Assembly (NCBI GenBank): GCA_002269645.1
Contig: NIVC01000689.1
Coordinates: 124,001-188,000, forward strand
Length of the DNA stretch: 64,000 nucleotides
Reading direction: 5' to 3'
DNA from: Macrostomum lignano
Lineage: Eukaryota
Shown: one piece after another, positions 27,341-57,906 of the stretch
Position numbering within the stretch: the first letter of the stretch is position 1
Layout of the letters: each line of letters opens with the position of its first letter
Made by a program: the position numbers and the translations under genes
Notes under the pieces: generated by a model
What the model was told of the DNA's origin: nothing
Databases searched by the model: none
Seen by the model: only the letters and a program-made list of their open reading frames with translations

Positions 27341-30300
27341 CTGTAAAGAGTGAATCTCTATGGCCAAACCAGTATTCTCTTCCACAGATGGAATGCCTTG
27401 AGAGGGGAAATGAGAGAAACCTGCATCTTCAATGCACTAATTCATGCTCAAACCACTCAATGCCCTTCTGCAGTCTAAGGCACCTCGGCTCAGTCGATGT
27501 TAAAAATGACACAATTTCGGCCAGACTGTCAGCTTTTCCGCGGCTACAAGCCTTCTGATTGGCGGCTGAGCCTTTCTCCGACTGGGTCAGCTTGAGCGGC
27601 GGAGGGCGACACGGTGACGGGTTTGATGAAGCCGAAGAGGAAGCTGCGCTGTGCCCGTTGCCAGCTTTGACTGCCGGGGAACTTTATTATTTTTTTCAGA
27701 GATTTTAGGAAAGCAAAAAGGAAATGGGAAGATTTTTAAATAGCAATTTGATTAAAAGCTCCAACCGTCTGAAATAGTTTCTTTGAGACAAAGACGCAGT
27801 CAACTAGTAATATACTTCAATAACAAAGACTACAATCACTAGCAGTGAAACAAAGACCACCATCACTAGCAGTGAAACAAAGACCACCATCACTAGCAGG
27901 GTAACAAAGACCACAATCTCTAGCAGTGAAACAAAACCACCATCAGTAGCAGTGTATTAAAGACCACTATCACTAGCAGTAAAACAAAGACCACCATTAG
28001 CAGTGAAACAAAGACCACCATCACTAGCAGTGTATCAAAGACCACTATCACTAGCAGTGAAACAAAGACCACCATCACTAGCAGTGTAACAAAGACCACC
28101 ATCACTAGCACTGAAACAAAGACCACCATTAGCAGTGAAACAAAGACCACCATCACTAGCAGTGTATCAAAGACCACTATCACTAGCAGTGAAACAAAGA
28201 CCACCATCACTAGCAGTGAAACAAAGAGTGAAACGCAGAACTGCACGAACAAAGACTCACTCGTGCGCTTTGGCAAGAGCTCTGGCGACGCGTTCTAGTC
28301 GAACCGATCGTGGCGTAGTTGGCGGAGACTCGGCCAGCTGCTGCTGTTGCAGATGCTGATGATGAGGCACAGTGGACGCCGAGCGGCCCTTGACATGAGA
28401 GAGAATGTTTCAAGCATGCAGTGCTCAGTGAAATTATAGAGTTACATATAGATTCACAAAGTAAAACTAAAAAGGATCAAAGAACTACACAATAGAATAT
28501 TACAAAGCACAACACATTAAGGCTAAAAAAGATAATTTAGCGGTACATGTACACTGTGAACAGCTGCGTGAAGTTTCTGGGTGATGAAATTCAAGGACTA
28601 CAGACCGGGAAGCTGACATGTCAAGGCTCACGAGGGTATAAATGAGATTTCAAGGCTAAAGTCAGAAGCTACATGTAGTTTATTGAAAACTTTTTATTAC
28701 ATTATTTGATGCCTCCTCAGGGGAGGGATCGCTGATAAAAAAGCGTAATGTAAAAAATAAAAGAAGCTTCATGTCGAAGTTAAGAGATTCATTTGGGAAT
28801 CCCTACGATGTCGAGGCTTGCAGGGAATCGCTATAATGCTGTAGTAGTGCTATAATGACTCTTAGAGAGAATTACTGAAATTTCAATGCTTTAGGGTTAG
28901 GTTAGGGTTAGGGTTAGGGTTAGGCTAGGGTTAGGGTTAGGCTAGGGTTAGGGTTAGAAGGTTGACAGATATTTTTAGATTTCCAAGGCTTATTGGGGGC
29001 ATTGCTGAGATGTCAAGGGGGGAAGTTGATATGTTAAAGCTTGTGGGGGGGAATTACTGACATGTCAAGGCTTACAAGGTTTGACAGGAGATTTTTTAAG
29101 ACTTCAAGGATACATGTAGCTTATTAAAAAAACGTGTATTGCATTTCTTTGGCTCCCCAACGGGGGGGGGGGTAGATTGCTAGTTTTAGCTAAAAATTTG
29201 TAATTGCTTTTGATAGCAAGCTATACTACGTACATGTCCTGTGCCTAATAATAAAAAATCACAACTCAACTCATTCAGAGTTTTAAGAATCTTTTAATCA
29301 TATTTGGCTTACTGACATTGTAACAAAATTTGCAATGATTGTATACTCCTTGAACTCAGTGTTAAGCCTTCGTTGAAGTCGAATAAAATGCTTTAGTTAT
29401 ATCCTATTAGGCTAATATAGGCCATGTTTATGAAAAAAAGCCCAGTCAATATTGGCTCATTTTTCTGAATGCTTGAATTATTGTAGTTAAAAATCATTTT
29501 TTTGTTACGCAATCAATAAGATAAGAATGATAAGTTGTGCTGTTTTTTATTAATAGAATATCAATAGAGCTTCAGGAAAGGCAAGACATATCAAAAGATG
29601 AGCATTGGGTCTAACTGCTATCAAAAGAAATGACAATTTTTGTGCCGCAAAAAAAAGAAAATCTCTAGCCTGCGTATTTTTTTTCTGAAAAATTTGCCTC
29701 CTAAAATTTCCAAGAAACCTGAATCCTGAAGGTTCTGGATTATGAGATTTCGATCTCGGTAATTGAATACCCTCGATAATTTAAAGTAGCTGTAAACCGG
29801 TGGAGTAGAAAAAAAACTTGCTAATGCTACTATTAGTAACATATATACGGCGAAAGTGACAGTATCGAGAAGTCACAAGGTAAAAAATTGACGACAATAT
29901 TCAGCAGGTTATAATATAACTAAGAACTCTACTGGGAGGCGTTCCTGATCTCTGTACCTGCCAGTGGTTCAGAAACGGCGAATCCTCGTCTGCCGACAGA
30001 TGCGGCGTAGACGAGGACAGCCGGTGACGACGGCGAGGCCGCTGCCACCGATTCACGGTGCCGGATGGGAACAGGTGCTGCTGCTGCAGCAGCAGGGGAT
30101 GTGAAACAGTTCAATGATGAATAGCAGAAGATTTTCAATCCAATCATATATGCAACAGATAATCAGAAAGTGACCGCGTGTCTGCATGCGTATCAGCGAC
30201 ATGAGCAGGCTGACATTGCTGCAGGCACACACTCACACAGGAGTGTACAGCGGCCCTAACTTTATTTATCGTTAGGCATGTACACTTCACTGTGCCTTGG

Positions 30301-40959: not shown

Positions 40960-42445
40960 CTAAATTCCGTGATTGCACAGCTGGCAGACCAGCAGCAAGT
41001 CCTCCCTAGACAGTGTAATCCGACTCCTGTGCTGGCATAGCCTGTAGGCATCGCTCAAGACCTGTACAACATAGGCTTCGGCGGCCGTCTGCAGACAGCA
41101 AATCGCCAACGCTTGCCAAGTGTCGCCAACGCCCGGCGATACAACCAGCTGGCCATTGTGCTTCAAATAGGCCGTGATCTCTTTCACTAGGCGCATAAAT
41201 GGCAGCTTTCTAATTAGCAGATCAGTTGAAGATTGGAAGTAGCGAATCTGACGCTCCACGTGCTGACGCTTGCGACGATGCTGCTGCTGCGGCTGCTTGG
41301 TGTGGGGAGGGTTTCGATTGACGTAAGCTAGCGACAAAAGTGCAGAATGAACTATTGTAGTGGGATTCAACTGAACGGACTTGAGCTGCGTTAAATAGCC
41401 ATGCTTTAAACCTAAACAGTCCTTCTTTAAACAATAATAATAATAATAACAATAACTGATGACACCTTGCCTTAATGGCCAGATGTGCAACCGACAGCTC
41501 AGCCGCAGCTTTTGCGCGGCGCATCTGAAGGCTGCGTACGGCTGTTCAGTCCAAGGACTGGAGGGTCGCCACACACAGCCTCAATTACCCCAGCTAATGC
41601 TGGCACCCATTTACAGCTGGGTGAACTGAAGCAATGCAGAGTTAAGTGTCTTGCTCAAGGACACAAATTGTTCCGAGTGGGTCGAGAATCGAACCCCCGG
41701 CCTTTCAGGCGTGAGTCCGACGCTCTGACCACTAGGCTACAACCCCATCCCCTTAAACCTAAATAGTCCTCCTTTAGCCTAAACGGTCTTCGCAAACCTA
41801 GATAATTCTCTTAAAACGTATCAGGTACGTTTTAAAAAACGTAAAAGGTAAAAAAGTGTCATGAGAAGCAAAGGGCGCACGCACCTTTCTAGCAAGCTGC
41901 TGACTCTTGCTACCACTAGGCGCTGCCGCAGTTGTCGACTTCTTCGAATGAGACGCAGAAGCAGGAGGATGAGAAGGCCTCCTGGCGGCTCTGGCTGGCT
42001 CATTTTCAGCATTATCGGCAGGCGCTGCAGCCGACAGCGAGTCATCCGAATCCACATCGTTTTCACCAGCCACAGCGGCAGGAGGCTCAGGCGAGGCGGA
42101 CACGCGAGGCCTCACAACAGCAGGAGCAGCTGATCGCCTGTACGACTGACGAGCGCCGGATGAAGCGGGCGTTGCTGAAGCTTCAACCCGACGGGCTACA
42201 GGAGACGGAACAGCAGCGGCAGCAGCGGTAGCCGGCCGATTCCTAACCGCGGCGCGGCCAATTAGGGCTGCAGCAGGTGTGCTAGATAATGGCGGAGCGA
42301 ATTGAGCCGGCAGTTGGGCCGGGTCGCGGCTAGCGTTGGCTTTGTCGCCTCCGCCGCTAGTGACAACTACATTAGTTGATTTAGCGTTCAGTGGTTGCTT
42401 CTTGGTAGCTGCTGCTGCCGCTGCTTGAGACTTTTGCCGCCGCAT
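40960..42445 (-). CDS. CENPA: Centromeric histone H3 variant CenH3/CENP-A; exons 42445-41885 and ~41295-40960 (~298 aa)
   Basis: Histone fold QIRYFQSSTDLLIRKLPFMRLVKEI..TWQALAICCLQTAAEAYVVQVLSDAYRLCQHRSRITL; H3 Q68 is M, F84 is W, T107 region is AY, loop 1 is longer, and the N-tail is long and basic/Ala-Pro-rich. The exon-2 acceptor is ambiguous. Confidence 0.88.
41430..41750 (-). mobile_element. tRNA-derived CORE-type SINE in the CenH3 intron with a ~24-bp TSD
   Basis: A box TAGCCTAGTGG, B box GGTTCGATTC, core CCTTGAGCAAGACACTTAACTCTGCATTGCTTCAGTTCACCCAGCTGTAAATGG, (TTA)n tail; flanks TTAAACCTAAAYAGTCCTYCTTTA at 41406-41429 and 41753-41776. Confidence 0.88.
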
Positions 42446-42599
42446 AATAGCTTTTATGTTATTTTTGTCAGGTTTGCAGGCTTACAGCTGCAAGATAAGA
42501 TGGGTTTGACTTAATAAGGAAGTGAAAATTAAGGACTAAGTGACTAAGTGACCAAGGATGTGAGGACTTGTGGCGTCGTGCGACTCGGTTTTCCCGCTC

Positions 42600-43230
42600 C
42601 AAAAAGATCAATGCAGTCTGTGGCCAAAGCAGCGATCGACTGCTTCACAAGGACTGGCTTCTCAAAAGAGATTCAAAGTGTCAGACACCAACTTCTGGTC
42701 CACGATGCTGCAGGCCTTGTACTGATGAATTGGAATCGGCACTATACCATCCATAAAGCTAGTAGAACGATTCCAAGGCACACTGAAGACCATGCTGAGA
42801 AGGCTGTTGGCACGCAAAAAGAAGTGAGACCAGTATCCGCCATATCCACTGTTTGCTATCAGGGAGGTGCCATAAGAACAGCCAGGCAGTTCAAGGACCA
42901 TTCAATCTGCTGCGTCAGGCCTGGGACAGACAGTAATAAGTAAGTTACTCACCAAGGTCACCAAGGAGGTCATCAAGAGGACATCATCTCCTTTGTCCTG
43001 GCACAGAGAGATTGACTGCATGCAAGACTAGACGCAGCAAGCAGGTGGAATGGAAGCACCAGAAACTCTGGTATGACTGGAGATTGTAGGAACAAGAATT
43101 GTTGTCTGGCAATCACGTGCTACTGTTACTGTCATCATTGTCCAAGAATCTGCATGCCAAATGGCAAGGTCTGTACCAATTGCTAGCAAAGTGCACAAAT
43201 GGGGTCCAATGTGAACTATTGGATTCAAAT
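42600..43230 (+). pseudogene. Decayed Ty3/Gypsy integrase (rve core and GPY/F module)
   Basis: Across frames: AKAAIDCFTRTGFSKEIQS, LVERFQGTLKTMLR, DQYPPYPLFAIREVP, QKLWYDWRL*EQELLSGNHVLLLL, NLHAKWQGLY; contains stops and frameshifts. Confidence 0.75.
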
Positions 43231-43801
43231 AGGAAATATAATTTATGAACATTTTCTATATAAACTTGCTCAAAAAATACAAGCCACAAGAGGCATTCCT
43301 GGTGCAGGTGTCAGTGTACTTGCAGGATATTGAGCCAAAGATATCGAACACCTCGATGAGAAATCGACTCAAGCCAACTCAAGCATGTCATAAAGGACTT
43401 CATGGGTGTCTTTAGCAAAACCCCTAGCTGGACCAACCTAGTCTAAACACTTCCAACCAAGTAGTTAAAGATTTGGCAATCCAAGGTATAACAGATAAGT
43501 CCTCTAAAATGAAATTCACTGAATGCTATCCAGCTTGGAGCAACTAAGATGCCTAACAGTGACTATTGCTTGCAAGTGTACCTATTGGCTAGGGATAGCA
43601 TGTGCCAATTTTAATCAAATTCAAAATACTGAATAACAAAAACATAGCATTGATGCTTGGGAGTGCCTATGGCCAAAAGGGCTAAGTTGGTTTTGTTAGA
43701 AGGAAACAATAGTTTTTGTTATCCAAGTTAATAGTTTAGCTAACCCAGCTGTAAATTTCCATTTGGCAATAGTAGATTTTGCCTTGTCTATAGACATAGA
43801 C

Positions 43802-44141
43802 CAGGGGTAGGCAAACTTTTTTATCTTAAGGGCCAGATAGAGAACCTAGAGCATGACTGCAGGCCAGATGAGGGGAGAGAAGAGAGAGGAAAGAGGAGAG
43901 AGGAGAGAAGAGAGGAGAGAGGAGAGAACAAAGAGGAGATAAGAAAAGAGAAAAAAGAGGTGAGGAGAAAAGGAAGAGAAGAGAAGAGAGAGGAAAAGAA
44001 GAGATTAGAGAGAAGAGTGCTTAGAAGAAATACAGACATTGAGCAGGCCAGATTGCTGTTGTGAAGTTTCAAAGGATCCCAAGGGCCAAATAGGCTTTGC
44101 AGGCTATATGTGGCCTATTGGCCAGAGTTTGCCAACCCTTG
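43802..44141. mobile_element. hAT/Charlie-like MITE containing a GA-rich tract
   Basis: TIRs CAGGGGTAGGCAAACT / AGTTTGCCAACCCTTG; degenerate 8-bp TSD ACATAGAC/ATATAGAT; empty-site paralog at ~11905-12030. Confidence 0.75.
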
Positions 44142-45319
44142 ATATAGATAGATAACCATTGATAAAAGATAACCAAGTTGATCATTTGGCTTGTTGGCCA
44201 TAGATATTAGCACAAAGAAATATATATATGGTAACTAGCAACATTTTATAAATATCATGCTTTAATATCAACTTCCATATAATAAAGATCAGAATTATAA
44301 ATTTGCTTAAATTTCATCTATTTGTCTATTATTGTTTCTTTATTTTATTTTAAACTTATAAGTTTTTCTCTATACATTTTTCTTTAAGCATGATATATAT
44401 GATATTGCAAAGTTAAAACTTAGAAAATTTTTAAAATCCTATTTTTATACAAACTTGCCTTTTGCATATATATTGACAAGTCATAGGATCCCTATTGAAG
44501 TCTCTATCTATAGATCTATTAGAAGATAAGATTATTCAATTGGCAAATTAACTAGAAAATGTTTTAGTAGCCCATATCTAAAAACTTAAAGCACTTAATT
44601 ATACAACTTGATGGAATTAAAGGAATTGGCAACCTAATATCTTTTTTTCTTTTCTCTTTACTCTTTTTTCACCTTTTTTTACTTTTTCATCTATTGTCTA
44701 CTTCATTTTTTCTTTCTTTATCTTATTCTTAGCAATTAATTATTTTTAAAAAATTGACAAAAGCCTATGAGACATATAAGAACTTTTACTAAAAACATAA
44801 AGCTGCAAAAATACAATAGTTTGCACAATAGGCTATTTATAGAGGCCTAGTCTTTCCAAAAATATCTATCTTATCTTCCTTGATTAGGGTGACTTTATTT
44901 AATACTTTGATGTTAATATTTAGGTCTTAAATAAAAGGCCTTGGTATTTTTTCTAAAATAATGTTTTAACTTTTTTTTAAATTAATAAATAAAAGCAAAA
45001 ATATGTTATGTCTATAGATAGCACTAATGGTTAAGCCTATGTAGCAGCCATTCTTAAATTGAATGCAAGTTTTCTTTAATTAGCATGCAAAAAGCTATGC
45101 CTAAGCCTATACTAGATTCTAGAGTTAGCAATCTTTTGGTTTCCTGCTCTAAATTATTTAAACACCTTTTTGAACTTTACAGCTACTGCTAGTATGGCTG
45201 GCCAACTTCCAGTGCCACAATCTATTGTCTTTGCTATTGAAGTCATCAACAGCATTATACTATGTGACCTTGATATGAATCATTGAGGATTGGTTGCGCT
45301 GGTACCTAATGTTAACAAA

Positions 45320-45450
45320 GAAAAATGTGATAGATGGCGAGGTACCACCTGCTTGCTAATAACAGGACTTGCGAGAGACATGTGGCATTGCTTTGTCCTA
45401 TAGGATTTTTATGTGGTGCCAAGCTTCTCCCATCAGCATTTTGGCAATAT
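45320..45450 (+). pseudogene. Possible Merlin/ISXO2-type transposase N-terminal remnant
   Basis: MARYHLLANNRTC.. resembles the LARxxLLxNxRxC zinc-finger start; short and degraded. Confidence 0.25.
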
Positions 45451-45459
45451 CCTCTACTG

Positions 45460-46740
45460 GATATATATATGTAGCAACGCAGAGAGTAGCACAGAAAAAA
45501 GAGATCTAGCTAGACTTTGCGCAGACATGTTTGCAGAACAACCAAGAGGGCAAGTCATAGCGGACTGGGGGCTGAGCCCAATGGCCTGCAAGTCAGTCAG
45601 AGATGTATCATTTAATGTCATAGTTTGGCCTTGGCCACGACGCAGGCACTTAGTGGGCTAATACAGGAGAGCTAGCACCAGAGGATTTTGCTTGCCCTGG
45701 CCATGGCTTCTTAGGCAGCAGCCAAATAACATCTGACGGGGTTTACAGATAGTGCAGCTGAGCGCAGGAACACTAGTGCAAGTCATCAGGTCCCTGGTCA
45801 GAACACTATCAGGGTAGTGCATGCCCAGGGCATAGCAGAGCAGTGACCTGTAGTGGGCATCCAGGGCTTGCTGTTGCATTGCAGTCATTGGCATAGCCTC
45901 CATGCCATATAGGAGAATCAGCTCAATGGCAGTGCAAAAAAAGGCACATCTTTAGGTTGTCATGAGCTGTTGAATTGAAGATGCTCCTGAGCATGCATGC
46001 CGCATGCTAGGCCTGAGTCCTATCAGAAACAATGGTGTTGGGGCTCAAGACAAGGGAGCCAAGGTAGAGGAAATCCTTGCACACCTTGATGACTTCTCTA
46101 TTTGGAAGAGCTAGCGCAGGGGTAGTTGCAGAGGCCATGTGGAGCACCTCAGTCTTGGATGCATTGATCACCAAGCCAACTCGGGTACCCTTGTAGAGTC
46201 TAGACAGAGCCCATTGGGCAGCAGCCGGATCGTGACACAGAAGAGCAATGTTGTCAGCATAGGCTAGAGCAGGCAGCGAGATGGCAGGATGTCGGGAGCT
46301 TCAGCGTGAGACCAGCACATAGCCATCATCTTCACGCAGGCATTGGTGAAGAACATAGTCTACTACAACAATGAAGAGTAGTGGAGCCAGCATGTTGCCC
46401 TGAAGGACGCCAGAAGTTGTGCTAAATTCTTCAGTGGGGCTGTCGCTTAACTGAACAAATGCTCTTAAAATGCTGTATAAGTCTATCACAGCAGCTACAA
46501 GTTTGGAAGGAATGTCATAGTAGGACAAAATCCACAGAAGTGCAAGTCTATCAACTGAGTTGAATGCTTTGCGGAAGTCAACAAAATCAATTAAGATGGA
46601 ATGCTGATATGTCTTATAGGCTTCAATGATACAGCAGATGGTTGCAACCTGCTCAGTTGTAGACTTGCCTGGTCTGAAACCACTTTGCCAGCTGAGAAGC
46701 AGCGGATTCAGCCTAGGCAGGCGGTTGCATAGCACTGCAT
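45460..46740 (-). mobile_element. 5'-truncated, decayed RTE-clade non-LTR retrotransposon (RT domain)
   Basis: QSGFRPGKSTTEQV, FVDFRKAFNSVDR, TSGVLQGNML, LAYADNIAL, GLVINASKTE, DFLYLGS; ends near a (TA)n run. Confidence 0.9.
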
Positions 46741-47289
46741 TGTGGCATGTTTACTAGATAATATATTAGATAATACTGGATAATATACTCTACTATATAA
46801 TACACTACTACCCTATGTAGAACTCTGTGAGCTTGTTCGATTCTGAAAAGTTCAAAAAGGGGTTTAATTAATTTAGAGTGGGTAACCAAAGGATTGCCCT
46901 TGGACACCCTATAGTCTACTATAGGCCTACATAGCATATAGGCAATATAGACATAGGTTAGTGCACATAAATAGGCCTACATATTATTGTTTAGTAAAGA
47001 ATCATACTGTAACTGAACTATATGACATCTAATTCTAAGGTAGGGCCTAGGCCAATAGATCATTGAATATACTATAGCCAGTAAGCCAGGCATAGCCTAG
47101 GCCCTAGCCTAGGTGAAAGACTTGGTCTTATAGGCAAGTAGAGTATTTTATAAGACAGATAATGTGACTAATGAAAACAATATCAATCAATGAAAAGTAA
47201 GATGGTTCAGATTAGGCCTAACTAAACCCTAATAAAAAATAAGTTAGGCCTAATATAATGAGGAAAAATGATTGATTAACTTCAATTTC

Positions 47290-48515
47290 TAAAGCTGTCA
47301 CGAGATCTCGATGAGACAAGATTCGAGACAAGATCTCGACATTTTTTCTTGTCTCGAGAAATCTCAAATTTTGTCAAGAAATTCAAGATGAGATTCAAGA
47401 ATTTTTCTGATACTTTTTTTCAAAAGCTTTTAAGTGATAAGATATAAAAAGGGGAGCAAATTTTCATATAAATACAACTGTTTGTTGTAACACACTTGAT
47501 AGGGCAATTTTCAAATGGTAAAATCTAGCCAATGTTGAGCAGTTATTTAACAAAAATAGCAAAGAATTTAAACTAGAATTAAGAAAGTATTCTGGAAAAT
47601 CTAAAAAATATATTTTAGAATTGTATCTTATCAAGAAATTTAAGACAAGATAAAGCAAGATAAGAGCAAGACAAAATGCATTTCTGAAATATATTTTTTA
47701 GATTTACTTTGTCTTGTCTCGTCTCGAAATTCTCGACTTATAAGCCTTTCTCGTCTCGAATAAAATCTCGGCAGTGCTTATCCCCACGGTACCGTAGGAA
47801 TAATTTCTGTCTTATTCCAACGGTACCGTGCGAATAATTTTCTGCTTATCCGCACGGCACACTGAGGAGATAGCTGCCCTATCTTCTACATATGCCGTGC
47901 GAATAATTTTCTGCTTATCCGCACGGCACACTGACGAGATAGCTGCCCTATCTTCTACATATGCCGTGCGAATAATTTTCTGCTTATCCGCACGGCACAC
48001 TGACGAGATAGCTGCCCCATCTTCTACATATGCCGTGTTGTGGGAAGTTTAGTCAAGGACGACTTAAGTCGTCCTTGAGTTTAGTACATACGATTTGAGT
48101 GCAGTATAACAACATAACTTGGCTTGAACATTTGTTCTAAAGAAATAAAGATTTTTTCTATGAGAAAGAATTTTTTTGTGTAGTAACAAATGATTTAAAT
48201 TAAATTAACTCTAAGAATTGTTTATTATTTAAATTTTTTGCAAAGTCTAATCTGATCTCGCCGTGATTTATATAGTCCATTGCCGCTTCCGTAGAATTTT
48301 ACTACTCATGTGAATTCGCATGATTCATATTCATATTGCGGACAAGCAGAAAATTATTCGCACGGCATATGTAGAAGATGGGCAGCTATCTCGTCAGTGT
48401 GCCGTGCGGATAAGCAGAAAATTATTCGCACGGTACCGTTGGAATAAGACAGAAATTATTCCTACGGTACCGTGGGGATAAGCAGTGCCTAAAATCTCTA
48501 ATTTTGACAGCTCTA
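47290..48515. mobile_element. hAT-type MITE with GTCTCG/CGAGAC subterminal motifs
   Basis: TIRs TAAAGCTGTCA / TGACAGCTCTA; perfect 8-bp TSD TCAATTTC (47282-47289 and 48516-48523). Confidence 0.88.
47778..48481. mobile_element. Foldback element nested in the hAT MITE, with 69-bp subterminal repeats (3 left, ~1.4 right)
   Basis: Long TIRs TTATCCCCACGGTACCGTAGG..; GCAGTGC duplicated on both sides (TSD 3, 5 or 7 bp depending on where the ends are placed). Confidence 0.85.
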
Positions 48516-48951
48516 TCAATTTCCACAAAAACATGCCACAAATGAAAAGGCCTATGTTCTTCGGACTTAAAAAATAATTTGCCAACCGAATCTTTCTGTT
48601 CCAGATCACAAGCAATTTTGACTGAAATAAGCTTTATTGTCACCGCTGTACTGGTTATAATTTCGAGGTATATATGTGAGGGTTCCCCGACAGATATTCG
48701 CGACAGATATTTTCTCCTTCAAACGGATAATTCAAACAAAAAATGAATTTATGTTTCGGGATGCATTACTTACTCTGACGCCGTATTCAGCTTTAAAATT
48801 TTGTAGACAAAAATTTTATGTCTTAAAGAAAAAAATATTAGTACGAATACAAAGTGTGTCAAAACGAATTTTATCACACATTCCTTACAAAAAAATTCTC
48901 ACGCCAAAGAACTTATGAAGTAACGGTAGCAATGAATTTTTTGTCAGTTTC

Positions 48952-49785
48952 TGACGCATGTCTCAACTTTGCAATGACACCTTAGACACATGTCCTACTT
49001 TTGTATTTCCTGGGATATCTGCTTCCAAAGTGTGCTTTCCGTGAGTCATTCATCATCCGTACCAAGACCAACCAAAACTTTGACTTATCGCTCCGTCTCT
49101 ATGCTTCAATCATTTGCTCTGAAACTTCTACCACTTCTTGACGCATGTCTCAGCTTTGCAGTGACACCTTAGACACATGTCCTACTTTTGTATTTCCCGG
49201 GATATCTGCTTCCAAAGTGTGCTTTCCGTGAGTCATTCATCATCCGTACCAAGACCAACCAAAACTTTGACTTATCGCTCCGTCTCTATGCTTCAATCAT
49301 TTGCTCTGAAACTTCTGCCACTTCTTGACGCATGTCTCAGCTTTGCAGTGACACCTTAGACACATGTCCTACTTTTGTATTTCCCGGGATATCTGCTTCC
49401 AAAGTGTGCTTTCCGTGAGTCATTCATCATCCGTACCAAGACCAACCAAAACTTTGACTTATCGCTCCGTCTCTATGCTTCAATCATTTGCTCTGAAACT
49501 TCTACCACTTCTTGACGCATGTCTCAGCTTTGCAGTGACACCTTAGACACATGTCCTACTTTTGTATTTCCCGGGATATCTGCTTCCAAAGTGTGCTTTC
49601 CGTGAGTCATTCATCATCCGTACCAAGACCAACCAAAACTTTGACTTATCGCTCCGTCTCTATGCTTCAATCATTTGCTCTGAAACTTCTACCACTTCTT
49701 GACGCATGTCTCAGCTTTGCAGTGACACCTTAGACACATGTCTGACTTTTGTATTTCCCGGGATATCTGCTTCCAAATTGTGCGT
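48952..49785 (+). repeat. 187-bp tandem repeat, left arm (4 full copies plus a partial)
   Basis: ORF starts at 48990, 49177, 49364 and 49551. Confidence 0.95.
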
Positions 49786-50446
49786 TCCGTGGGTTATGTC
49801 TATATATCTCTCGCTGCGTCTTTTGCTCAAGCATACTACGAGACACGCGATCAAACACATGATTGGTTTGCGTATTTCTCGAGATATTTTTTGAGCTCTT
49901 TGGTTTCAAAATGACACCTTTAGATAGAGTCAGCTAGCTTTTGTGTTATTCCTGAACAATGTCTGTTTCTTGGCGAATCTGGTGGCGAAAAGTATATTGT
50001 CGACATAAGTTTTTTGTAAAGTATTACAAGCAGTTTCTCGAAACAAAAAACAATAACTCATTAAGAACAACTGTATTTGTGTAAATGTCTTGTACTATGT
50101 ATAGATTATTGCAGTTACTAACGTAGTTGAGGGGAAAGAACAAATGGTCGTATGAATAAAGTGAGTAGTTGCTCAAACTCGGCGAGATTCTCAAATCAGT
50201 ATGAATAAAATGAGTGCGTCCTCCTGAGCAAGTGCTCAAAATCAATTTCCCAAGAGTTACATGTAGTGCTCTCCCCGTGAGCAAATGCTCGGTGACTGAG
50301 TAGAGACTCGCTTCAGTATGAATAAACTCTGGTCATAAACAATTGCAATTTGTCTTGAGATCTTGCTCAGCAAAAGTTGAGTCTCCTCTGTAGTAGACTC
50401 ACTGGTTGAGCAGCATCCAGCCATGTCCCTAAGCGGCAAATAGCGT

Positions 50447-51868
50447 CTATGTCCCTACGCTATTGAACTCAAATTTATAGGCAACCCATAGGCTTTTTCG
50501 CACAAGTAACGAAAACCAGCGGTCGCACTTTACCTGTTACCGCCATACAAAAGTGGCCTATCTAGGGAATATAAGATCTATGATTCATATGAACATTGAG
50601 CAACTGCTCCAGATCAGAGCAGTTGCTCGAGTTCGAGCTTTTGCTCAATCTCAGAGTTTGAGGTGAAACTCGCCAGTTATTGCTCACTGTAGTCATACGG
50701 CCAAAATAAAGCTAGGAAATTTTAGGAAATGTAACTTTCGTATAAACAAACATAACCGTCAGCTGTCTAAATTAATGCATGTGACACACACCTTGTTGTT
50801 CTGGTCTTGTTGTCGAGTCCAGCAAGATTTGTGAAACCAGAAGAGGCACGATGGGCACTCGATCTGCAGATTTTATGCGGTATAGCTATGCCTCATACGC
50901 TCGTATATACTTACATGAATTACCTTAGTGCGTCCAAAAAGTTCTTAGACACCCCTCCTATCTCTGCACATGTTCAATCGATTTTTATAAAAATTGACAA
51001 AAACATGTACCTATATGTAATGAATTCAGTGCTAAAGTTTCAGCTTAATCGGGTTGACATATAGCAAAAGAAATTGATCATTTCTAAGGTACACTAAGGT
51101 GTTAATTTTCAACGTAACTTACCCACTCAATTGTACTCGTAGAACGATTTCGACCCCGCGGCCGGGGTTCTTCTAAATGGCAACCGTGGCATGTGTTTTG
51201 CTCTGATTTTTCGTCAAAATTGGTTATTGCTGTCTTTATAATGCCTCGAGCAACGGACAGCTTTGGCTGCACATTAGGTATAATAGTGCACCTACCAAGC
51301 AATAAATTTCTTCCAAAGAGCGAAACAAAAACGCCGCAGGAGTCGGAGTCTATTTGCTGCGTGCAAATCCGATGGGAAACTGCGAAGCATTCCCTCTGGG
51401 AGTTTTCAATGAGTGGGCCAAGACATTCGTCGACATCTGACAATAGGAGTAGCGCGCTGAAACCGTAAAACGAATTTTATAGATGCAGAGATTTGCATAA
51501 GGTGTAATAAAATAATTTTAGGCTTGGTACATTCCTTACTTCCACTTTCTTGCTATTTCCTCCACTTCATTCTTTCTTCTTCCGCCAGTGCGCCTCATCG
51601 AGTCCAGTGAGTAGATTTTTTTCTCATCAAGAAAGATTGCTACGAGCCAAAAATGGCTCGGCGACAACATTGGAATCAGAATTTTTGTTATTTTCTAATT
51701 GTTGGATAGTGGTAAGAACAAAATGGATTGTATCGTTTCTTTAATAATTAATATACGAGTAATTTGTATTTGCAATTGTACTTACGCTTCTTCCTGTCGC
51801 GTAGTTCTGCAAGGCTTCTTTTGTCGGAAGCAGAAGATTGTTTGGGTTGTCAATTGTTCTGACTGAAA
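50447..51868 (-). CDS. Spliced Ulp1/SENP (C48) cysteine protease plus PHD finger, 5'-truncated; exons 51868-51786, 51694-51540, 51456-51123, 50863-50792, ~50533-50447
   Basis: KILIPMLSPSHFWLVAIFLDEKKIYSLDSM (His, Asp), TQQIDSDSCGVFV (Gln, Cys), CHGC..IEW|IECPSCLFWFHKSC; GT-AG junctions are phase-compatible; last exon uncertain. Confidence 0.8.
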
Positions 51869-51885
51869 CTGCAAAGTGCATAGAA

Positions 51886-52905
51886 AGCACACTTTGGAAG
51901 CAGATATCCCGGGAAATGCAAAAGTCAGACATGTGTCTAAGGTGTCACTGCAAAGCTGAGACATGCGTCAAGAAGTGGTAGAAGTTTCAGAGCAAATGAT
52001 TGAAGCATAGAGACGGAGCGATAAGTCAAAGTTTTGGTTGGTCTTGATACGAATGATGAATGACTCACGGAAAGCACACTTTGGAAGCAGATATCCCGGG
52101 AAATACAAAAGTAGGACATGTGTCTAAGGTGTCACTGCAAAGCTGAGACATGCGTCAAGAAGTGGTAGAAGTTTCAGAGCAAATGATTGAAGCATAGAGA
52201 CGGAGCGATAAGTCAAAGTTTTGGTTGGTCTTGGTACGGATGATGAATGACTCACGGAAAGCACACTCTGGAAGCAGACATCCCGGGAAACACAAAAGCA
52301 GGACATGCGTCCAAGGTGTCACTGCAAAGCTGAGACATGCGTCAAGAAGTGGTAGAAGTTTCAGAGCAAATGATTGAAGCATAGAGACGGAGCGATAAGT
52401 CAAAGTTTTGGTTGGTCTTGGTACGGATGATGAATGACTCACGGAAAGCACACTTTGGAAGCAGATATCCCGGGAAATACAAAAGTAGGACATGTGTCTA
52501 AGGTGTCACTGCAAAGCTGAGACATGCGTCAAGAAGTGGTAGAAGTTTCAGAGCAAATGATTGAAGCATAGAGACGGAGCGATAAGTCAAAGTTTTGGTT
52601 GGTCTTGGTACGGATGATGAATGACTCACGGAAAGCACACTTTGGAAGCAGATATCCCGGGAAATACAAAAGTAGGACATGTGTCTAAGGTGTCACTGCA
52701 AAGCTGAGACATGCGTCAAGAAGTGGTAGAAGTTTCAGAGCAAATGATTGAAGCATAGAGACGGAGCGATAAGTCAAAGTTTTGGTTGGTCTTGGTACGG
52801 ATGATGAATGACTCACGGAAAGCACACTTTGGAAGCAGATATCCCGGGAAATACAAAAGTAGGACATGTGTCTAAGGTGTCACTGCAAAGCTGAGACATG
52901 CGTCA
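51886..52905 (-). repeat. 187-bp tandem repeat, right arm (5 full copies plus a partial), inverted relative to the left arm
   Basis: ORF starts at 52119, 52306, 52493, 52680 and 52867. Confidence 0.95.
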
Positions 52906-53938
52906 GAAACTGACAAAAAAATTCATTGCTACCGTTACTTCATAAGTTCTTTGGCGTGAGAATTTTTTTGTAAGGAATGTGTGATAAAATTCGTTTTGAC
53001 ACACTTTGTATTCGTACTAATATTTTTTTCTTTAAGACATAAAATTTTTGTCTACAAAATTTTAAAGCTGAATACGGCGTCAGAGTAAGTAATGCATCCC
53101 GAAACATAAATTCATTTTTTGTTTGAATTATCCGTTTGAAGGAGAAAATATCTGTCGCGAATATCTGTCGGGGAACCCTCACATGAGGTATATTAGGTAA
53201 ATGGCAATGTGAAGCATTGTTAAATCAACGGGTAATACATCGTTAACACGTGTTTTTTTGTATAAGCATACTTCTAGATGCATTGTTTTGTTTTAAGCTT
53301 TTCAAAGAAACTGAAATATCTTAAATTCTTTTGTTCAACCATAAACGAAACTACTTATATGCCTCTTGTTTTACTTCCTTTCATGCGCGCTATTATAAAA
53401 AATCTTTCGCGAAAATGTCGTCACTTGTAGCAAAAACAGTAAATTACTTATTAATACTTCAAATTATCAAATTATCCATCCAATTAAGTCAAACTTCGTG
53501 TGATCACGAACAACTTTTATATCAATTTTGATTTCTTTTTAAATTTTTACATTCATTGTATTGTAAGGATTTTAATTTCTAATATTATAGAATTTTTATT
53601 AAAGAATTTAATTTCTAATATTATCTAATATAATATTTAGATTTTTAGATTTTAATTTGGACATTTGTACATTTTATATGGTTTAATTCTATAAAACAAT
53701 TTTTAATTAAAAATGAAATCAAAAGATTTTTTTGTATATTATAAAATAAAGTAGGCCTATTTTAGTATTTAATCTAATAATTATATAATATAAACTAGGC
53801 CTAGGCCCTAGCTATCATTGTCTTAACATCAAGAAGGCCTGGGTATAGCCTTTGAAATTTAAATAACTTTAGCCAATTGGTTCTTACTGATGCCAAATCA
53901 ATGCTAAAATGAACTATAATTAATATACTCATACTTAG

Positions 53939-54095
53939 GTGCAACCTTGGGATTCACTTGGCTGTTTCTATTGGCAACCCACACATGTAAGTCACTATTA
54001 GACAGAATAGTAGTCACGTGACTGTCTTAGCAAATAGCAACTTACATGTACATGTGTTGCCAATAGAAATGACCAGGTGATTCCTAAAGTTGCAC
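53939..54095. mobile_element. Decayed palindromic MITE
   Basis: GTGCAACCTTGGGATTCACTTGG..TTTCTATTGGCAAC is inverted as GTTGCCAATAGAAA..GGTGATTCCTAAAGTTGCAC. Confidence 0.65.
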
Positions 54096-54244
54096 ATATA
54101 TGGATATACTGCTATATATAACAAACTCAGCAAATGACATGGCTATCCTGCAGAATTGTTTGTTACACTTACTCATTACTATATACATTTTTTATCTATG
54201 AAGTGTTTTGGCATTAAAATTCAGTTGTGGGGGTTGCAACTGTC

Positions 54245-54793
54245 GGTACATGACCAAGATGGCCACACACCAAGATGGCCACAGCTTTAAGTGTCTAAAT
54301 AGATAATAATAAGCCTAGGTCTATATATTTCACTTATTTCCTATTGGTAATAATTAATTAGAGAAATAGATACTAAAAAGATGCTATATTGGAATTGTAA
54401 TATATTAGGCCCTTATATTATAGTCATTCTTTTGGCTTTAGCTTTTATTATAGCTTGACTTATATATATTTATTCACTATATCAAGCAAGTAGTCTAACA
54501 CAAAATAAATACCTTGCCTTGTATATTTATCTTAATTTTTGTATAGCATTACTAGTAACAATGGTTTCTCAATAAACAGATATTGATAGATTTGATAGAT
54601 GTAATGATAAGGAATAAATTGGCATAAAAACTAAAAAAGATTATTTAGTTTCAAATCTATTATTGCATTAGTATTTATAAATATGATTGATTAAACATAA
54701 TAAAAATAACAATAGCTACTATGTTACTAATTAATGATAAAAAGAGAGGAAAGCCAAAGAGACTCAATGTTGTGGCCATCTTGGTCTTATACC
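54245..54793. mobile_element. Non-autonomous DNA element with GG termini and an 8-bp TSD (Merlin- or MULE-like)
   Basis: TIRs GGTACATGACCAAGATGGCCAC / GTGGCCATCTTGGTCTTATACC; TSD CAACTGTC at 54237-54244 and 54794-54801. Confidence 0.8.
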
Positions 54794-56622
54794 CAACTGT
54801 CAAAAGTGTGATTGCTCTCACTGAAATTATCCTACCGCTGAGTCACCAAAGTTGTGCTAGGGGTAAACTTCTATCCCTATAAATAATTCCACAGCTGTCA
54901 CTAAAGTTGTCAAAGGGCTTAACTTTTGTCTATATATTAAATGTTTTAATGTTGGTAGCTGCTATTTAGCCCTTATAAGTATTGTTTTCCTGTTATTCCA
55001 GTAGCGTTTACTATTATTCTGGTAGCGTTTATTGTTATTTTGGACTGAGTGGTATATTGGCTTACTGGTATGTATATTGCATATACTTCTAATCCTGGGC
55101 GTTACTGAGATCAGAGGATCATAGTCTCTGGTTATTCTTATATGTATCAATTTAGGATCTACTTTGTATTCTCTTACTACTTCCACTTCTCAGTAGTATA
55201 TACTGTATGTGTTCTCTGCCACTTCACTTCTCTTCTGCAAATGAATAACTTGGAAAACAATCTTCAATAATGTTTACTTGGAACTCTTACTATCCACTAT
55301 TAACTGTCTTGTTATCAAACTGCAATGCGCAAGGTTGGTCTCTCCTCCACTGAAAATGCTTCTATTTATACTTTAATTTTTATTGCTAGTTTAAACAAAT
55401 ATTAGTTTGCATAAAATATTATAAAAAATATGTGTATTATAACAATTGTGTTTTCCTAGATTTGGCACGCATTCAAAATAAGTTATATGATTATCAATTT
55501 TATAAAAGAATCAGGAAGGCCCTGCACACAACTTAACTTTTATTGCAATTTCCAGGTTTTTCAAAATTTTAGTATGCAATTTTGAATTTATGTGCTGATG
55601 TCATTGGCAAATAAATGTCTTTGAATTCTGATACAAAGTCTAGGGCTTTAAAGAGAGAGGGTTTTGTTTAAAATTTTTTGCTAAGCTACAAATATTGCAA
55701 ATAAAGTGCTTTCTACTTAAAAATGACTAGTGGTCAACTTTCTTCCCTAACATGGATTGTGCCACTAAGAGGTTTGCCCAGCCCTTGAACTAACAAATAT
55801 TTTAATGCCAAAACACTTCTAAAATTTTGGCAAAATTTAAGATATAGCTGATTATCTAAGTTTGTTTAATAAATACTTTTATTTATATTAAATACCATTG
55901 TATTTAATGCTATTGAAAAATATCTATATCTTTTGTTTAAAATAACTACATATAATATTTATTGAATTTTTCCTTTAGTATGCCCTAAATAGATAATACT
56001 AAGCAATTGCATAATTATTTCCCATTTCATTGCTGCCTAATATTTGTGAAGCTATTATTAGCTATATTCAAATGTTTTTAGCCTAGGTAATTACTAGAAA
56101 ATTAGACCAAATTTGACCTGCCCTTTTTGTCATGATTTAAAGCACTAGCAGATCAAAAATCTTGTTGCATACTAGGCATTTTACTAAGTTTATTTCTAAC
56201 ATTGAAGCAGGAAATAGATGAATTGACCAAGAAAAAGTTTTTATTTCTAATTTCAAATTTCAAATAAATTTTTTTATAGAAATGCTTGTAAAACTTAAAA
56301 CAAAATCTTTATTTGCTTGTAATAAAAATTTAGGAAATAATTGTATGCAACCAGGTATCCCTATGCTTTAGGTCTACAAGAGCTGTGACTCTTGAAGCTT
56401 TTAATACTTAGGCAAAATAGAAACAAAATATTGTATAGAATTGAGATTTTTACTCTTATAACACATGGAGCTTGGTTGGTATTAACTTGTTGAATTAGAA
56501 AATGCATACTCTTAAACAATAGAAATTAGCTGTGGTAAGATTCTAGTTTCTTAGTAAAAACTTTTTCGTTAACTGGAAGGCATGGCAGTCTTTTTACTTT
56601 AAATTAAATCCCATTGCAGGCC

Positions 56623-57906
56623 ATGTCCTCCACCGGTGTTCTGTTTGCGCCACCCAACTATTTTCGCGCCCAGCGCGTTGAAATTGCTGCCGCCTACTCT
56701 GGCTTTAAACTGACCAAGGCCAAGTATGAGCCAGGCAAAACCGATAGCACCCTGGTCAAGAAGGGCTTCCCAGCTGGCTGCCTGCCAGCTTTCGAGTCTG
56801 GCAAGGAACAACTATTCGAAGCCAACGCCATTGCCCAGTTTGTTGCCAACGAGCAACTGCGAGGCGGCTCTGGCAATTCGGCCAACGTTGCCCAGTTCGC
56901 CAACTGGAGCGACGCCACCTTCGTGCCGCCCATGACCGCCTGGGTGCTGCCCTGCCTTGGTGTTACCAGGCCCGACGCTGGCCAGATCGAGGCCGCCAAG
57001 GCCCAGGTAGCAGCCGGTTTGAAGTTTCTGGACTCTTATCTGGCCACTCGAACCTACCTGGTTGGCGAGCGAATCACCCTCGCTGATGTGGCTGTAGCCT
57101 GCGATCTGTTGCCGCTGTTCCAGCACGCCATGGGCCCGGAGCAGCGCCGGCCATACGCCAACGTCTCTCGCTGGTTTAACACCCTGGTTAACCAGCCGGA
57201 ATTCAAGCGAATCCTAGGCGAGGTGAAGCTGGCCGATAAAGCTGGCGAATTCAGCCAGGCTCGCTACGATCAGCTGCGGCAACAGTCGGGCGGCAAGAAA
57301 GACGACAAGAAGCAGGCTAAGAAGGAAGAGCCGAAGAAGAAGGAAGCGGCGCCTAAGAAGGAGGAGCCAAAGAAGGAGGCTACAGCTACCGCTGCCGACG
57401 AGAGTGAGAAGAAGAAGGAGGATAAAGATCCTTTTGCCAAGCTCCCAGTCGGCACCTTCAACATGGACGAGTTCAAGCGCGTGTACTCCAACCAGGACAT
57501 TAAGACCGTTGCCATACCATACTTCTGGCAGAACTTCGATCCCGAGCACTACAGTCTGTGGTACTGCGAATATCTCTATCCGGAAGACCTGCGCCTCCTA
57601 TTCATGTCCAGCAATCTGATTGGCGGCATGTTCCAGCGCCTGGAAAGGATGCACAAGCACGCGTTCGGTTCCATGGTTGTGTTTGGCGAGAATAACAAGA
57701 GCACAATTAGTGGTCTCTGGTTCTGGCGCGGCCAGGGTCTGGCTTTTGAGCTTAGCGAAGATCTACAGGTGGATTATGAGAGCTACTCGTGGCGCAAGCT
57801 GGATCCTAAATCCGATGAGGCTAAGAAATTGGTTGAGGCCTACTTCCTGCATGATGAGGGCGACTTCGGTGACAAGAAGTTTGCTAGGGGCAAGATCTTC
57901 AAATAA
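56623..57906 (+). CDS. EEF1G: Elongation factor 1-gamma (eEF1B-gamma), coding region intronless
   Basis: GST-N and GST-C domains, K/E-rich linker, and C-terminal EF1G domain (KDPFAKLP..FNMDEFKRVYSN..FMSSNLIGGMFQRLE..VDYESYSWRKLD); ATG follows a cattgcag| acceptor, so the ORF-track TTG start at 56614 is intronic. Confidence 0.97.
   Translation: MSSTGVLFAPPNYFRAQRVEIAAAYSGFKLTKAKYEPGKTDSTLVKKGFPAGCLPAFESGKEQLFEANAIAQFVANEQLRGGSGNSANVAQFANWSDATFVPPMTAWVLPCLGVTRPDAGQIEAAKAQVAAGLKFLDSYLATRTYLVGERITLADVAVACDLLPLFQHAMGPEQRRPYANVSRWFNTLVNQPEFKRILGEVKLADKAGEFSQARYDQLRQQSGGKKDDKKQAKKEEPKKKEAAPKKEEPKKEATATAADESEKKKEDKDPFAKLPVGTFNMDEFKRVYSNQDIKTVAIPYFWQNFDPEHYSLWYCEYLYPEDLRLLFMSSNLIGGMFQRLERMHKHAFGSMVVFGENNKSTISGLWFWRGQGLAFELSEDLQVDYESYSWRKLDPKSDEAKKLVEAYFLHDEGDFGDKKFARGKIFK

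What the first reader, a model, noticed from the sequence alone, without database searches (positions are those of the whole stretch)
50447..51868. Hidden spliced SUMO-protease (Ulp1/C48) plus PHD-finger gene carried by the transposon
Hand splicing reconstructs a full His-Asp-Cys triad with the oxyanion Gln (SHFW, LDS, QQIDSDSCG), followed by a PHD-like finger (CHGC..WIECPSC..WFHKSC..VKCDRW, with the last ligand apparently W). The junctions are clean and stop-free, implying recent selection. The 5' end abuts the right repeat array, so this is likely the C-terminus of a larger transposon protein. Ulp1 domains are known in plant Kaonashi MULEs, Ginger1 and Zisupton. A protease coupled to a chromatin reader could be an anti-silencing module that removes SUMO from silencing complexes at the element (inference). 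It is notable that it sits in a CpG-decayed domain near CenH3.
Basis: partly seen in the sequence, partly recalled or inferred. Interest (0 to 1): 0.85.

Follow-up and report, generated by a model that had tools for sequence, protein, structure and literature searches.

The report
Truncated SUMO-protease/PHD gene remnant in transposon
A young, non-autonomous Mutator/Rehavkus-like DNA transposon in the flatworm Macrostomum lignano keeps the last four exons of its lost transposase gene, which encode the back half of a Ulp1/SENP-type (C48) protease domain and a PHD finger; this domain pairing is already known from animal transposases, so the find is real but fairly ordinary.

Summary
On the minus strand, four GT-AG exons (51866-51786, 51694-51540, 51456-51123, 50863-50759) splice into a 224-aa open frame. 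It carries the C48 His-Asp-Gln-Cys residues at Ulp1-like spacing, followed by a PHD finger.

One detail is wrong. The fourth exon reads straight on to C-VT-C and a TGA stop, as in all relatives.

The host element is window 48674-53184 (4,511 bp). It has 1.1-1.3 kb inverted termini built from 187-bp tandem arrays and an exact 9-bp target-site duplication. A 98.7 %-identical sister contig of the same M. lignano assembly has the empty site.

Relatives in fish are 700-1,280-aa proteins with transposase, Peptidase_C48 (PF02902) and PHD (PF00628). The module is therefore the transposase's own C-terminus, not a captured host SENP gene.

This copy lacks the transposase and about 70 N-terminal residues of the protease domain. 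It is a deletion derivative, and its intact frame reflects youth rather than selection.

Ulp1+PHD on Mutator and Ginger1 transposases was published in 2010. Any anti-silencing role is untested.

Verdict: new member of a known kind, low-to-moderate interest.

The parts
48665..48673 (.). Left copy of the 9-bp target-site duplication, GAGGTATAT
   Evidence: Sequence. The empty site in sister contig NIVC01000202.1 has a single GAGGTATAT.
48674..49797 (+). Left inverted terminus. It has a 269-nt unique end (48674-48942, starting ATGTGAGGGTTCCCCGACAG) followed by 4.5 copies of a 187-bp tandem repeat.
   Evidence: (I1-I9; the outer 269 nt are 100 % complementary to the right end).
49798..50758 (-). 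Internal non-coding region 3' of the gene remnant. It holds a cluster of GAGCAnnTGCTC palindromes (50163-50646).
   Evidence: The extra exon is rejected.
50759..50863 (-). Exon 4, IECPSCLFWFHKSCWTRQQDQNNKVCVTCINLDS plus a TGA stop. It carries PHD ligands 3 to 8.
   Evidence: The same exon start (W|IEC) is seen in L001/L002 and in Garra rufa L003.
51123..51456 (-). Exon 3. It carries the C48 oxyanion Gln113 and catalytic Cys119 (QQIDSDSCGVFV), a linker, and the first PHD ligands (C-HG-C). It ends ...STIEW|GTAAGT.
   Evidence: Homologue P0002 was found with this exon (E=1.7e-4 in 1.84 billion proteins).
51540..51694 (-). Exon 2, KITKILIPMLSPSHFWLVAIFLDEKKIYSLDS... It carries catalytic His41 (51655-51653) and Asp58 (51604-51602). 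Donor AA|GTAAGG, phase 2.
   Evidence: Both of its intron positions are shared with L002.
51786..51866 (-). Exon 1 remnant (SVRTIDNPNNLLLPTKEALQNYATGRS, donor AGC|GTAAGT). It is cut off upstream by the right repeat array. An in-frame ATG lies at 51932 inside the array.
   Evidence: Homology of this piece is not shown.
51883..53184 (-). Right inverted terminus, with 5.5 copies of the 187-bp repeat followed by the 269-nt unique end (52916-53184). Its innermost unit is cut about 12 nt short compared with the left arm, which suggests the deletion breakpoint.
53185..53193 (.). Right copy of the 9-bp target-site duplication, GAGGTATAT

Best explanation
Window 48674-53184 is a recently inserted, internally deleted (non-autonomous) cut-and-paste DNA transposon of the Mutator superfamily, of the Rehavkus-like type. 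It has a 9-bp TSD and long inverted termini made of subterminal tandem repeats, and the transposase of this type ends in a PHD finger. The host is Macrostomum lignano.

Shown: the 2.1-kb interior retains only the 3' end of the element's transposase gene. That piece encodes the C-terminal half of a C48 (Ulp1/SENP-type) cysteine-protease domain with all four catalytic residues, fused to a PHD finger.

Shown for relatives: in full-length relatives this module is the C-terminus of a 700-1,280-aa DDE transposase.

Inferred: in the autonomous element the PHD finger tethers the transposase to H3K4me3-marked chromatin. Its two cage tryptophans align with KDM5A W1625 and W1635. The C48 domain would remove SUMO, or a related Ubl, from chromatin, repair or silencing factors, or from the transposase itself, at the site of action.

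Inferred for this copy: it can be moved in trans through its intact termini. Its own truncated C48(deltaN)-PHD product, if made at all, is unlikely to be an active protease.
For: Element boundaries and mobility:
- An exact empty site with a single GAGGTATAT is present in sister contig NIVC01000202.1, which is about 98.7 % identical in the flanks.
- The termini are 1.1-1.3 kb, with the outer 269 nt 100 % identical, and carry 187-bp arrays of 4.5 and 5.5 copies.
- The host is identified by a 100 % match to NIVC01000689.1 of assembly NIVC00000000.

Domain identity:
- H-17-D and Q-6-C spacings equal those of Ulp1.
- A profile of the window and L002 modules hits only PHD fingers and C48 proteases in the PDB: KDM5B PHD3 at 1.2e-3, the Ulp1-like protease 6dg4 at 1.6e-3, and SENP5, SENP1 and SENP2 at 0.02-0.04, with the catalytic motifs aligned.
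- hhalign to the fish module profile gives 98.3 %, E=1.4e-14.
- That fish profile hits SENP2 at 2e-7, SENP1 at 2e-6, Ulp1 at 1.5e-5 and PHD fingers at about 3e-7.
- Its members carry precomputed PF02902 and PF00628 hits.

The module belongs to the transposase:
- In Garra rufa locus L003 a 767-aa transposase ORF lies directly upstream.
- 51 relatives were found, many of them transposase+C48+PHD.
- The transposase family has conserved DATG, TDxSxA, CxxH and SN..VE.WF..K motifs, and one member is named 'MULE transposase domain-containing'.
- All three intron positions are shared with L002, and the W|IEC position is also shared with the fish gene.

Literature:
- Ulp1 and PHD occur at the C-terminus of Ginger1 and Mutator transposases (PMC2836005).
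- Rehavkus has a 9-bp TSD, a PHD finger and tandem repeats in long inverted termini (PMC6446971; PMC10218199; bioRxiv 10.1101/2024.12.02.626372).

Truncation: no transposase and no N-terminal C48 half is present anywhere in the element or the window.
Against: - No autonomous copy from M. lignano could be recovered, because no eukaryotic genome search was available (all empty).
- The link to a transposase therefore rests on relatives that are only 25-34 % identical.
- Assignment of that transposase family to MULE/Rehavkus is indirect. It rests on TSD length, terminus architecture, motif inspection and one UniRef name. No Pfam MULE hit is recorded and no Repbase Rehavkus sequence was at hand.
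- Exon 1 and all splice junctions lack RNA evidence.
- No activity or histone-binding data exist for any member, so the functional part is inference.
Confidence: 0.82

Rival explanations
1. Passive capture of a host SENP/Ulp gene fragment by the transposon (Pack-MULE style), with no relation to the element's own proteins.
For: Only a fragment of the C48 domain is present, and it abuts the repeat array. MULEs are known to capture host fragments (PMC6446971).
Against: - The closest relatives are not host SENPs (E only 0.02-0.04). They are C48-PHD modules fused to transposases.
- Those relatives share the domain order, linker length and intron positions.
- A captured SENP fragment would not carry the same PHD finger.
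Confidence: 0.03
2. The remnant is a complete, functional small accessory gene of the element. It would be translated from the in-frame ATG at 51932 in the array to give a product of about 246 aa, and would act as a protease or chromatin reader in this very copy.
For: - The frame is open through all four exons, and all catalytic and zinc-ligand residues are intact.
- An in-frame ATG exists.
- KI-MULEs in plants carry ULP genes separate from the transposase (cited in PMC2836005).
Against: - Only 40 residues precede the catalytic His, against about 110 in Ulp1 and the SENPs. The WLxD region is absent.
- In all relatives the module is fused downstream of a transposase.
- The intactness is explained by the youth of the insertion.
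- The ATG lies in repeat sequence that is present in every 187-bp unit.
Confidence: 0.08
3. The element belongs to another Ulp1-carrying superfamily (Zisupton or Ginger1) rather than MULE/Rehavkus.
For: Both superfamilies are reported with Ulp1-type domains, and Ginger1-9_HM has Ulp1+PHD (PMC2836005). Zisupton is abundant in fish, where the relatives were found.
Against: - The TSD is exactly 9 bp.
- Zisupton makes 8-bp TSDs (PMC12730594), and its KDZ domain PF18758 (PMC9297572) is not among the relatives' Pfam hits.
- Ginger1 transposases are Gypsy-integrase-like, unlike the DATG / TDxSxA / CxxH family seen here.
Confidence: 0.06
4. Chance assembly of short ORFs, with no real gene.
For: Each exon is short, and hand splicing can create frames.
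Against: - Profile statistics are strong.
- An independent homologue has the same exon structure.
- Splice phases are consistent.
Confidence: 0.01

Closest known systems
Rehavkus DNA transposons (Mutator superfamily; Repbase families such as Rehavkus-1_TC and Rehavkus-1_HR)
   Same: - 9-bp TSD.
- Long inverted termini carrying short arrays of a satellite-like unit. Rehavkus-1_TC has a 164-bp unit in arrays of 5 and 8 monomers; here a 187-bp unit occurs in 4.5 and 5.5 copies.
[quoted passage not shown]
   Different: - Reported hosts are arthropods and annelids, whereas this host is a flatworm.
- A C48 domain is not mentioned for Rehavkus in the papers I could read.
- This copy has no transposase, so clade membership could not be tested by sequence.
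Animal MuDR-type and Ginger1 transposases with C-terminal Ulp1 and PHD domains (Bao, Kapitonov & Jurka 2010, PMC2836005; Hydra, Branchiostoma)
   Same: The same domain pair in the same order (Ulp1 catalytic domain, then PHD) at the C-terminus of a DNA transposase. Introns lie within the transposase gene.
   Different: Ginger1 has an integrase-type transposase and different TSDs.
Fish 'uncharacterized' transposase-C48-PHD proteins (e.g. P0030 Astyanax, P0034 Archocentrus, P0012 Gymnodraco; Garra rufa locus L003)
   Same: A homologous C48-PHD module (hhalign 98.3 %). Catalytic residues and zinc ligands are conserved, and the intron before IEC is shared.
   Different: Only 23-27 % identical to the full-length proteins, and 34 % to the 139-aa Garra rufa fragment P0003. 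These proteins are full length with a DDE transposase, and the TIR/TSD structure of the fish elements was not resolved.
Plant KI-MULEs (Kaonashi) and other ULP1-bearing MULEs
   Same: A Mutator-superfamily element carrying a C48 domain.
   Different: In the plant elements the ULP is a separate, often transduplicated gene without a PHD (from the literature cited; not tested here).
KDM5A/KDM5B PHD3, PHF2 and PHF8 H3K4me3-reader PHD fingers
   Same: These are the best PDB matches of the PHD part. Both cage tryptophans (KDM5A W1625 and W1635) align with W190 and W199 of the window peptide (PMC9172573).
   Different: The matches are weak (E 0.001-0.1). The C3-C4 loop is one residue shorter. Binding has not been tested.

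Membership tests
Peptidase C48 (Ulp1/SENP, PF02902) | His, Asp, (Gln), Cys catalytic residues in this order with family-typical spacing | tested here: met
   H41-17-D58 and Q113-6-C119. The spacings are the same in yeast Ulp1 1EUV.
Peptidase C48 (Ulp1/SENP, PF02902) | Significant profile similarity to bona fide C48 proteins | tested here: met
   - A1 profile against the PDB: Ulp1-like 6dg4 at E=1.6e-3; SENP5, SENP1 and SENP2 at 0.02-0.04.
- A1 against the fish profile A2: 98.3 %, E=1.4e-14.
- A2 against the PDB: SENP2 at 2.2e-7 and Ulp1 at 1.5e-5.
- A2 members carry PF02902.
- A single-sequence search alone was negative.
Peptidase C48 (Ulp1/SENP, PF02902) | Complete catalytic domain, including the N-terminal substrate-binding half (WLxD region, about 110 residues before the His) | tested here: not met
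   At most 40 residues precede His41. No N-terminal half was found in the element at E<=100 or in the window.
Peptidase C48 (Ulp1/SENP, PF02902) | SUMO/NEDD8 isopeptidase activity | not testable with these tools
   This needs biochemistry.
PHD finger (PF00628) | Cys4-His-Cys3 ligand pattern with canonical spacing | tested here: met
PHD finger (PF00628) | Profile similarity to known PHD fingers | tested here: met
   KDM5B PHD3 at E=1.2e-3 with profile A1. Relatives P0003, P0030 and P0034 carry PF00628. A2 against PDB PHD fingers gives about 3e-7.
PHD finger (PF00628) | Histone H3 tail (H3K4me3) binding | not testable with these tools
   The only evidence is that the two cage Trp align.
Mutator superfamily / Rehavkus-type DNA transposon | 9-bp (8-11 bp) target-site duplication | tested here: met
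   Exact 9-bp GAGGTATAT, verified against an empty site.
Mutator superfamily / Rehavkus-type DNA transposon | Long terminal inverted repeats with subterminal tandem repeats | tested here: met
   compared with the descriptions.
Mutator superfamily / Rehavkus-type DNA transposon | MULE-type DDE transposase encoded by the element | tested here: not met
   It is absent from this copy, so the copy is non-autonomous. The relatives' transposase has D, D, CxxH and E motifs, and one relative is named MULE. No Pfam MULE hit is on record.
Mutator superfamily / Rehavkus-type DNA transposon | Transposase clusters with Repbase Rehavkus sequences | not testable with these tools
   Repbase is not available.
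Zisupton (KDZ) | 8-bp TSD and a KDZ transposase domain (PF18758) | tested here: not met
   The TSD is 9 bp. PF18758 is not listed for any of the 51 relatives.
Pack-MULE style capture of a host SENP | Nearest relative is a host cellular gene | tested here: not met
   The nearest relatives are transposase-fused modules.

The most novel reading that the evidence does not exclude
The transposase-fused C48-PHD module may be an H3K4me3-guided deSUMOylase. It would locally strip SUMO from SUMO-dependent silencing machinery, or from repair factors, to keep the element active. The family appears still mobile in M. lignano, a transgenesis-capable flatworm where this could be tested. A further possibility is that the truncated C48(deltaN)-PHD product of non-autonomous copies acts as a reader-only competitor that modulates transposition.
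Probability: 0.12. Interest if true: 0.75.

Novelty: new member of a known kind. Interest (0 to 1): 0.3.

Why it matters
- It documents a very recently mobile (insertion-polymorphic) Mutator/Rehavkus-like element in a flatworm. The reviews I could read list this group only from arthropods and annelids.
- It links this architecture (9-bp TSD, satellite-bearing termini, PHD) to a C48 protease module. That module is conserved, catalytic residues included, from flatworm to fish transposases.
- That breadth argues the protease-plus-reader pair has a real role in transposition or in escaping silencing. No member has been tested experimentally.
- For genome annotation, the practical lesson is that this locus is a transposon remnant and not a host SENP or PHD gene.

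Tried and rejected
- A single-sequence search of the spliced peptide found nothing at E<=1e-3 in the 5.8-billion protein set. Against the PDB it gave only marginal PHD hits. Profiles were needed.
Run with exon 3 alone, it gave one true relative (P0002) and one repeat artefact (P0001).
- Exact look-ups of five element ORFs in the assembly collection found nothing, so no further M. lignano copies were recovered.
- A metagenome scan with the module profile gave 153 pattern matches, none confirmed.
- NCBIfam scans of eight related transposases gave no IS256 or MULE link, and only a weak XopD (C48) hit for P0048.
- A search for TIRs and arrays around the Garra rufa gene gave no convincing element ends.
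- The Zisupton paper (Böhne et al. 2012) was not held.

Full report
**What is in the sequence**

The feature is on the minus strand. Four exons join through canonical GT...AG introns with consistent phases:
- E1, 51866-51786, donor AGC|GTAAGT.
- E2, 51694-51540, acceptor TTAG|, donor AA|GTAAGG, phase 2.
- E3, 51456-51123, acceptor TTTCAG|C, donor TGG|GTAAGT.
- E4, 50863-50762, followed by a TGA stop at 50761-50759.

The introns are 91, 83 and 259 nt long. The spliced product is 224 aa. It contains His41 (SHFW), Asp58 (SLDS), Gln113 and Cys119 (QQIDSDSCG). The spacings are H-17-D and Q-6-C. The same spacings occur in yeast Ulp1, whose sequence I recalled from memory and then verified as 1EUV_A at E=3.5e-150.

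A zinc-ligand pattern follows: C-x2-C-x21-C-x2-C-x4-H-x2-C-x11-C-x2-C.

Reading E4 straight through gives ...NNKVCVTCINLDS*, which is a canonical last C-x2-C pair. Every relative closes its PHD finger in this same exon. L001/L002 end VCDDCTSMFNY*, and the fish proteins end W.C.LC. The fifth exon is therefore rejected, and the gene remnant spans 51866-50759.

**Is it more than chance, and is it C48 plus PHD?**

Single-sequence searches were nearly blind.

With exon 3 alone, the full HMMER scan of 1.84 billion representatives found one true relative, P0002. P0002 lies on two 1.2-kb Logan contigs, L001 and L002. These carry the same three exons with the same three intron positions. They conserve the catalytic residues (H-17-D again) and all eight zinc ligands at 32 % identity.

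A two-sequence profile of the window and L002 modules (A1) was searched against the PDB. Its significant hits (full-sequence E <= 0.05) were all PHD fingers and C48 proteases, and these also dominate the weaker hits up to E=10:
- KDM5B PHD3, E=1.2e-3.
- The Ulp1-like SUMO protease 6dg4, E=1.6e-3.
- SENP5, SENP1 and SENP2, E=0.02-0.04, with the catalytic motifs aligned.

A1 also retrieved a Garra rufa protein, P0003, annotated PF00628.

**The module belongs to a transposase**

At the Garra rufa locus (L003) a 767-aa ORF lies immediately upstream. The N-terminal C48 motif FKTLEPHEWL follows it.

Searching that ORF gave 51 relatives. Many are 700-1,280-aa fish proteins carrying the ORF's family plus precomputed PF02902 (Peptidase_C48) and PF00628 (PHD). 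Examples are P0030, P0034 and P0012.

An 8-sequence profile of their C-terminal modules (A2) matches the PDB as follows:
- SENP2, E=2.2e-7.
- SENP1, E=2.4e-6.
- Ulp1, E=1.5e-5.
- PHD fingers, about 3e-7.

A2 aligns with A1 at 98.3 % probability, E=1.4e-14, over 173 columns running from the His to the end of the PHD. A local HMM of the fish modules scores the window peptide at E=1.3e-8 among 1,196 window ORFs.

The N-terminal ORF family conserves DATG, TDxSxA, H.C..H, LWSG and (S/T)N..VE.WF..K. This is a DDE/CxxH pattern of the Mutator-like kind. One barnacle member is named 'MULE transposase domain-containing protein' by UniRef.

The module is therefore the transposase's own C-terminus and not a captured host SENP gene.

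**The element**

The remnant sits between two inverted arms:
- Left arm, 48674-49797.
- Right arm, 51883-53184.

Each arm has a 269-nt unique end, and these ends are 100 % complementary to each other. Each end is followed by a 187-bp tandem array, of 4.5 and 5.5 copies, at 97-98 % identity.

The window is 100 % identical to contig NIVC01000689.1 of assembly GCA_002269645.1, the Macrostomum lignano Mlig_3_7 genome. A sister contig, NIVC01000202.1, is about 98.7 % identical in the flanks. It lacks exactly 48674-53184 and carries a single GAGGTATAT where the window has two copies. This proves three things: the region is a discrete mobile insertion of 4,511 bp, the TSD is exactly 9 bp, and the insertion is recent.

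CpG o/e is 0.85 in the element and 1.0 in the gene part, against 0.28-0.39 in the flanks. So the element is not CpG-decayed; only its surroundings are.

**Classification**

[quoted passage not shown] This is the published description of Rehavkus, which is treated as part of, or sister to, the Mutator superfamily:
- PMC6446971, Table 1.
- Rehavkus-1_TC, with a 164-bp unit in arrays of 5 and 8 monomers in its inverted termini, PMC10218199.

Zisupton makes 8-bp TSDs and carries the KDZ domain PF18758, which is not recorded for any relative. Ginger1 transposases are integrase-like. Both are disfavoured.

I could not compare the transposase with Repbase Rehavkus sequences. The superfamily call therefore rests on architecture and motifs.

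**This copy is a deletion derivative**

Nothing in the window resembles the related transposases. Nothing in the element resembles the first 106 profile positions of the module. Only 40 residues precede His41, against about 110 in Ulp1 and the SENPs.

The right array's innermost unit stops about 12 nt short of where the left array's does, directly against E1. This marks the likely deletion breakpoint.

The open frame is explained by the youth of the insertion, so no selection on this copy needs to be invoked. An in-frame ATG at 51932 inside the array could in principle give a 246-aa C48(deltaN)-PHD product. Without the substrate-binding half, protease activity is unlikely.

**Likely mechanism (inferred)**

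Catalytic residues and zinc ligands are conserved from flatworm to fish. In autonomous elements the module is therefore probably functional.

The PHD's best structural relatives are all H3K4me3 readers: KDM5B and KDM5A PHD3, PHF2, PHF8 and KDM7. The two tryptophans forming the KDM5A trimethyl-lysine cleft, W1625 and W1635 (PMC9172573), align with W190 and W199 of the window peptide. This suggests the transposase is tethered to active, H3K4me3-marked chromatin.

The C48 domain would then deconjugate SUMO or a related modifier at that site. None of this has been tested.

**Novelty**

Ulp1 domains on Mutator elements of Hydra, lancelet and plants, and Ulp1+PHD on Ginger1 and Mutator transposases, were described by 2010 (PMC2836005). 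The present case adds four things:
- A flatworm host.
- Proof of recent mobility.
- A link between the Rehavkus-type architecture and a C48 module.
- The observation that a large, unannotated transposase-C48-PHD family exists in fish.

It is a new member of a known kind.

Noticed in passing
window 47761-48498: A second, unrelated foldback-type element (47770-48489, 720 bp). It has 110-nt inverted arms and 69-bp and 34-bp subterminal tandem repeats, and is flanked by a 9-bp duplication, TAAAATCTC. It is also absent from the sister contig NIVC01000202.1. Two independent young insertions with 9-bp TSDs therefore lie within 1 kb of each other.
   Followed up: partly
window 50163-50646: The palindrome GAGCAnnTGCTC occurs 4 times exactly and twice with one mismatch inside the element's interior, 3' of the gene stop. 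There are no exact copies elsewhere in the 64 kb. Window-wide there are 10 matches against 3.4 expected, and 0 of 100 shuffles reach 10. These may be protein-binding sites or a nested repeat.
   Followed up: partly
window 48674-53184 versus flanks 42000-47700 and 53185-56600: CpG observed/expected is 0.85 in the element (1.0 in the gene remnant) but 0.28-0.39 in the flanking intergenic DNA. The insertion is young relative to whatever depletes CpG here.
   Followed up: partly
window 51932 (minus strand): An ATG inside the innermost 187-bp repeat unit is in frame with exon 1. A promoter in the terminus could therefore yield a 246-aa truncated product. The same short ORF recurs in every repeat unit.
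   Followed up: no
window 46301-46735 (minus strand): A 144-aa ORF with reverse-transcriptase-like motifs (…FVDFRKAFNSVDR…), probably a non-LTR retrotransposon fragment.
   Followed up: no
window 18900-25446: A 28-bp minisatellite of 233 copies (6.5 kb, 90 % matches). There are many other minisatellites in the first 41 kb, which also holds liprin-like coiled-coil and SAM-encoding exons.
   Followed up: no
window 28891-28957: An interstitial TTAGGG telomere-type repeat of about 11 units.
   Followed up: no
window 56623-57906; L004-L007: An intronless EF-1-gamma gene (427 aa) encodes an identical protein on two contigs of the assembly. This fits the known duplicated state of the M. lignano genome. 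A histone-fold (CenH3-like) gene lies at about 40960-42445 (PF00125 in L006).
   Followed up: partly
L003 14702-19639 (Garra rufa): Next to the fish transposase-C48-PHD gene lies a retroelement. It has gag-like, reverse-transcriptase/RNase H and tyrosine-recombinase-like ORFs (DIRS/Ngaro-like).
   Followed up: no
P0044: A 1,211-aa member of the transposase family is labelled 'MAG: Sedimenticola sp.' in NCBI. This is almost certainly eukaryotic DNA binned into a bacterial metagenome-assembled genome.
   Followed up: no
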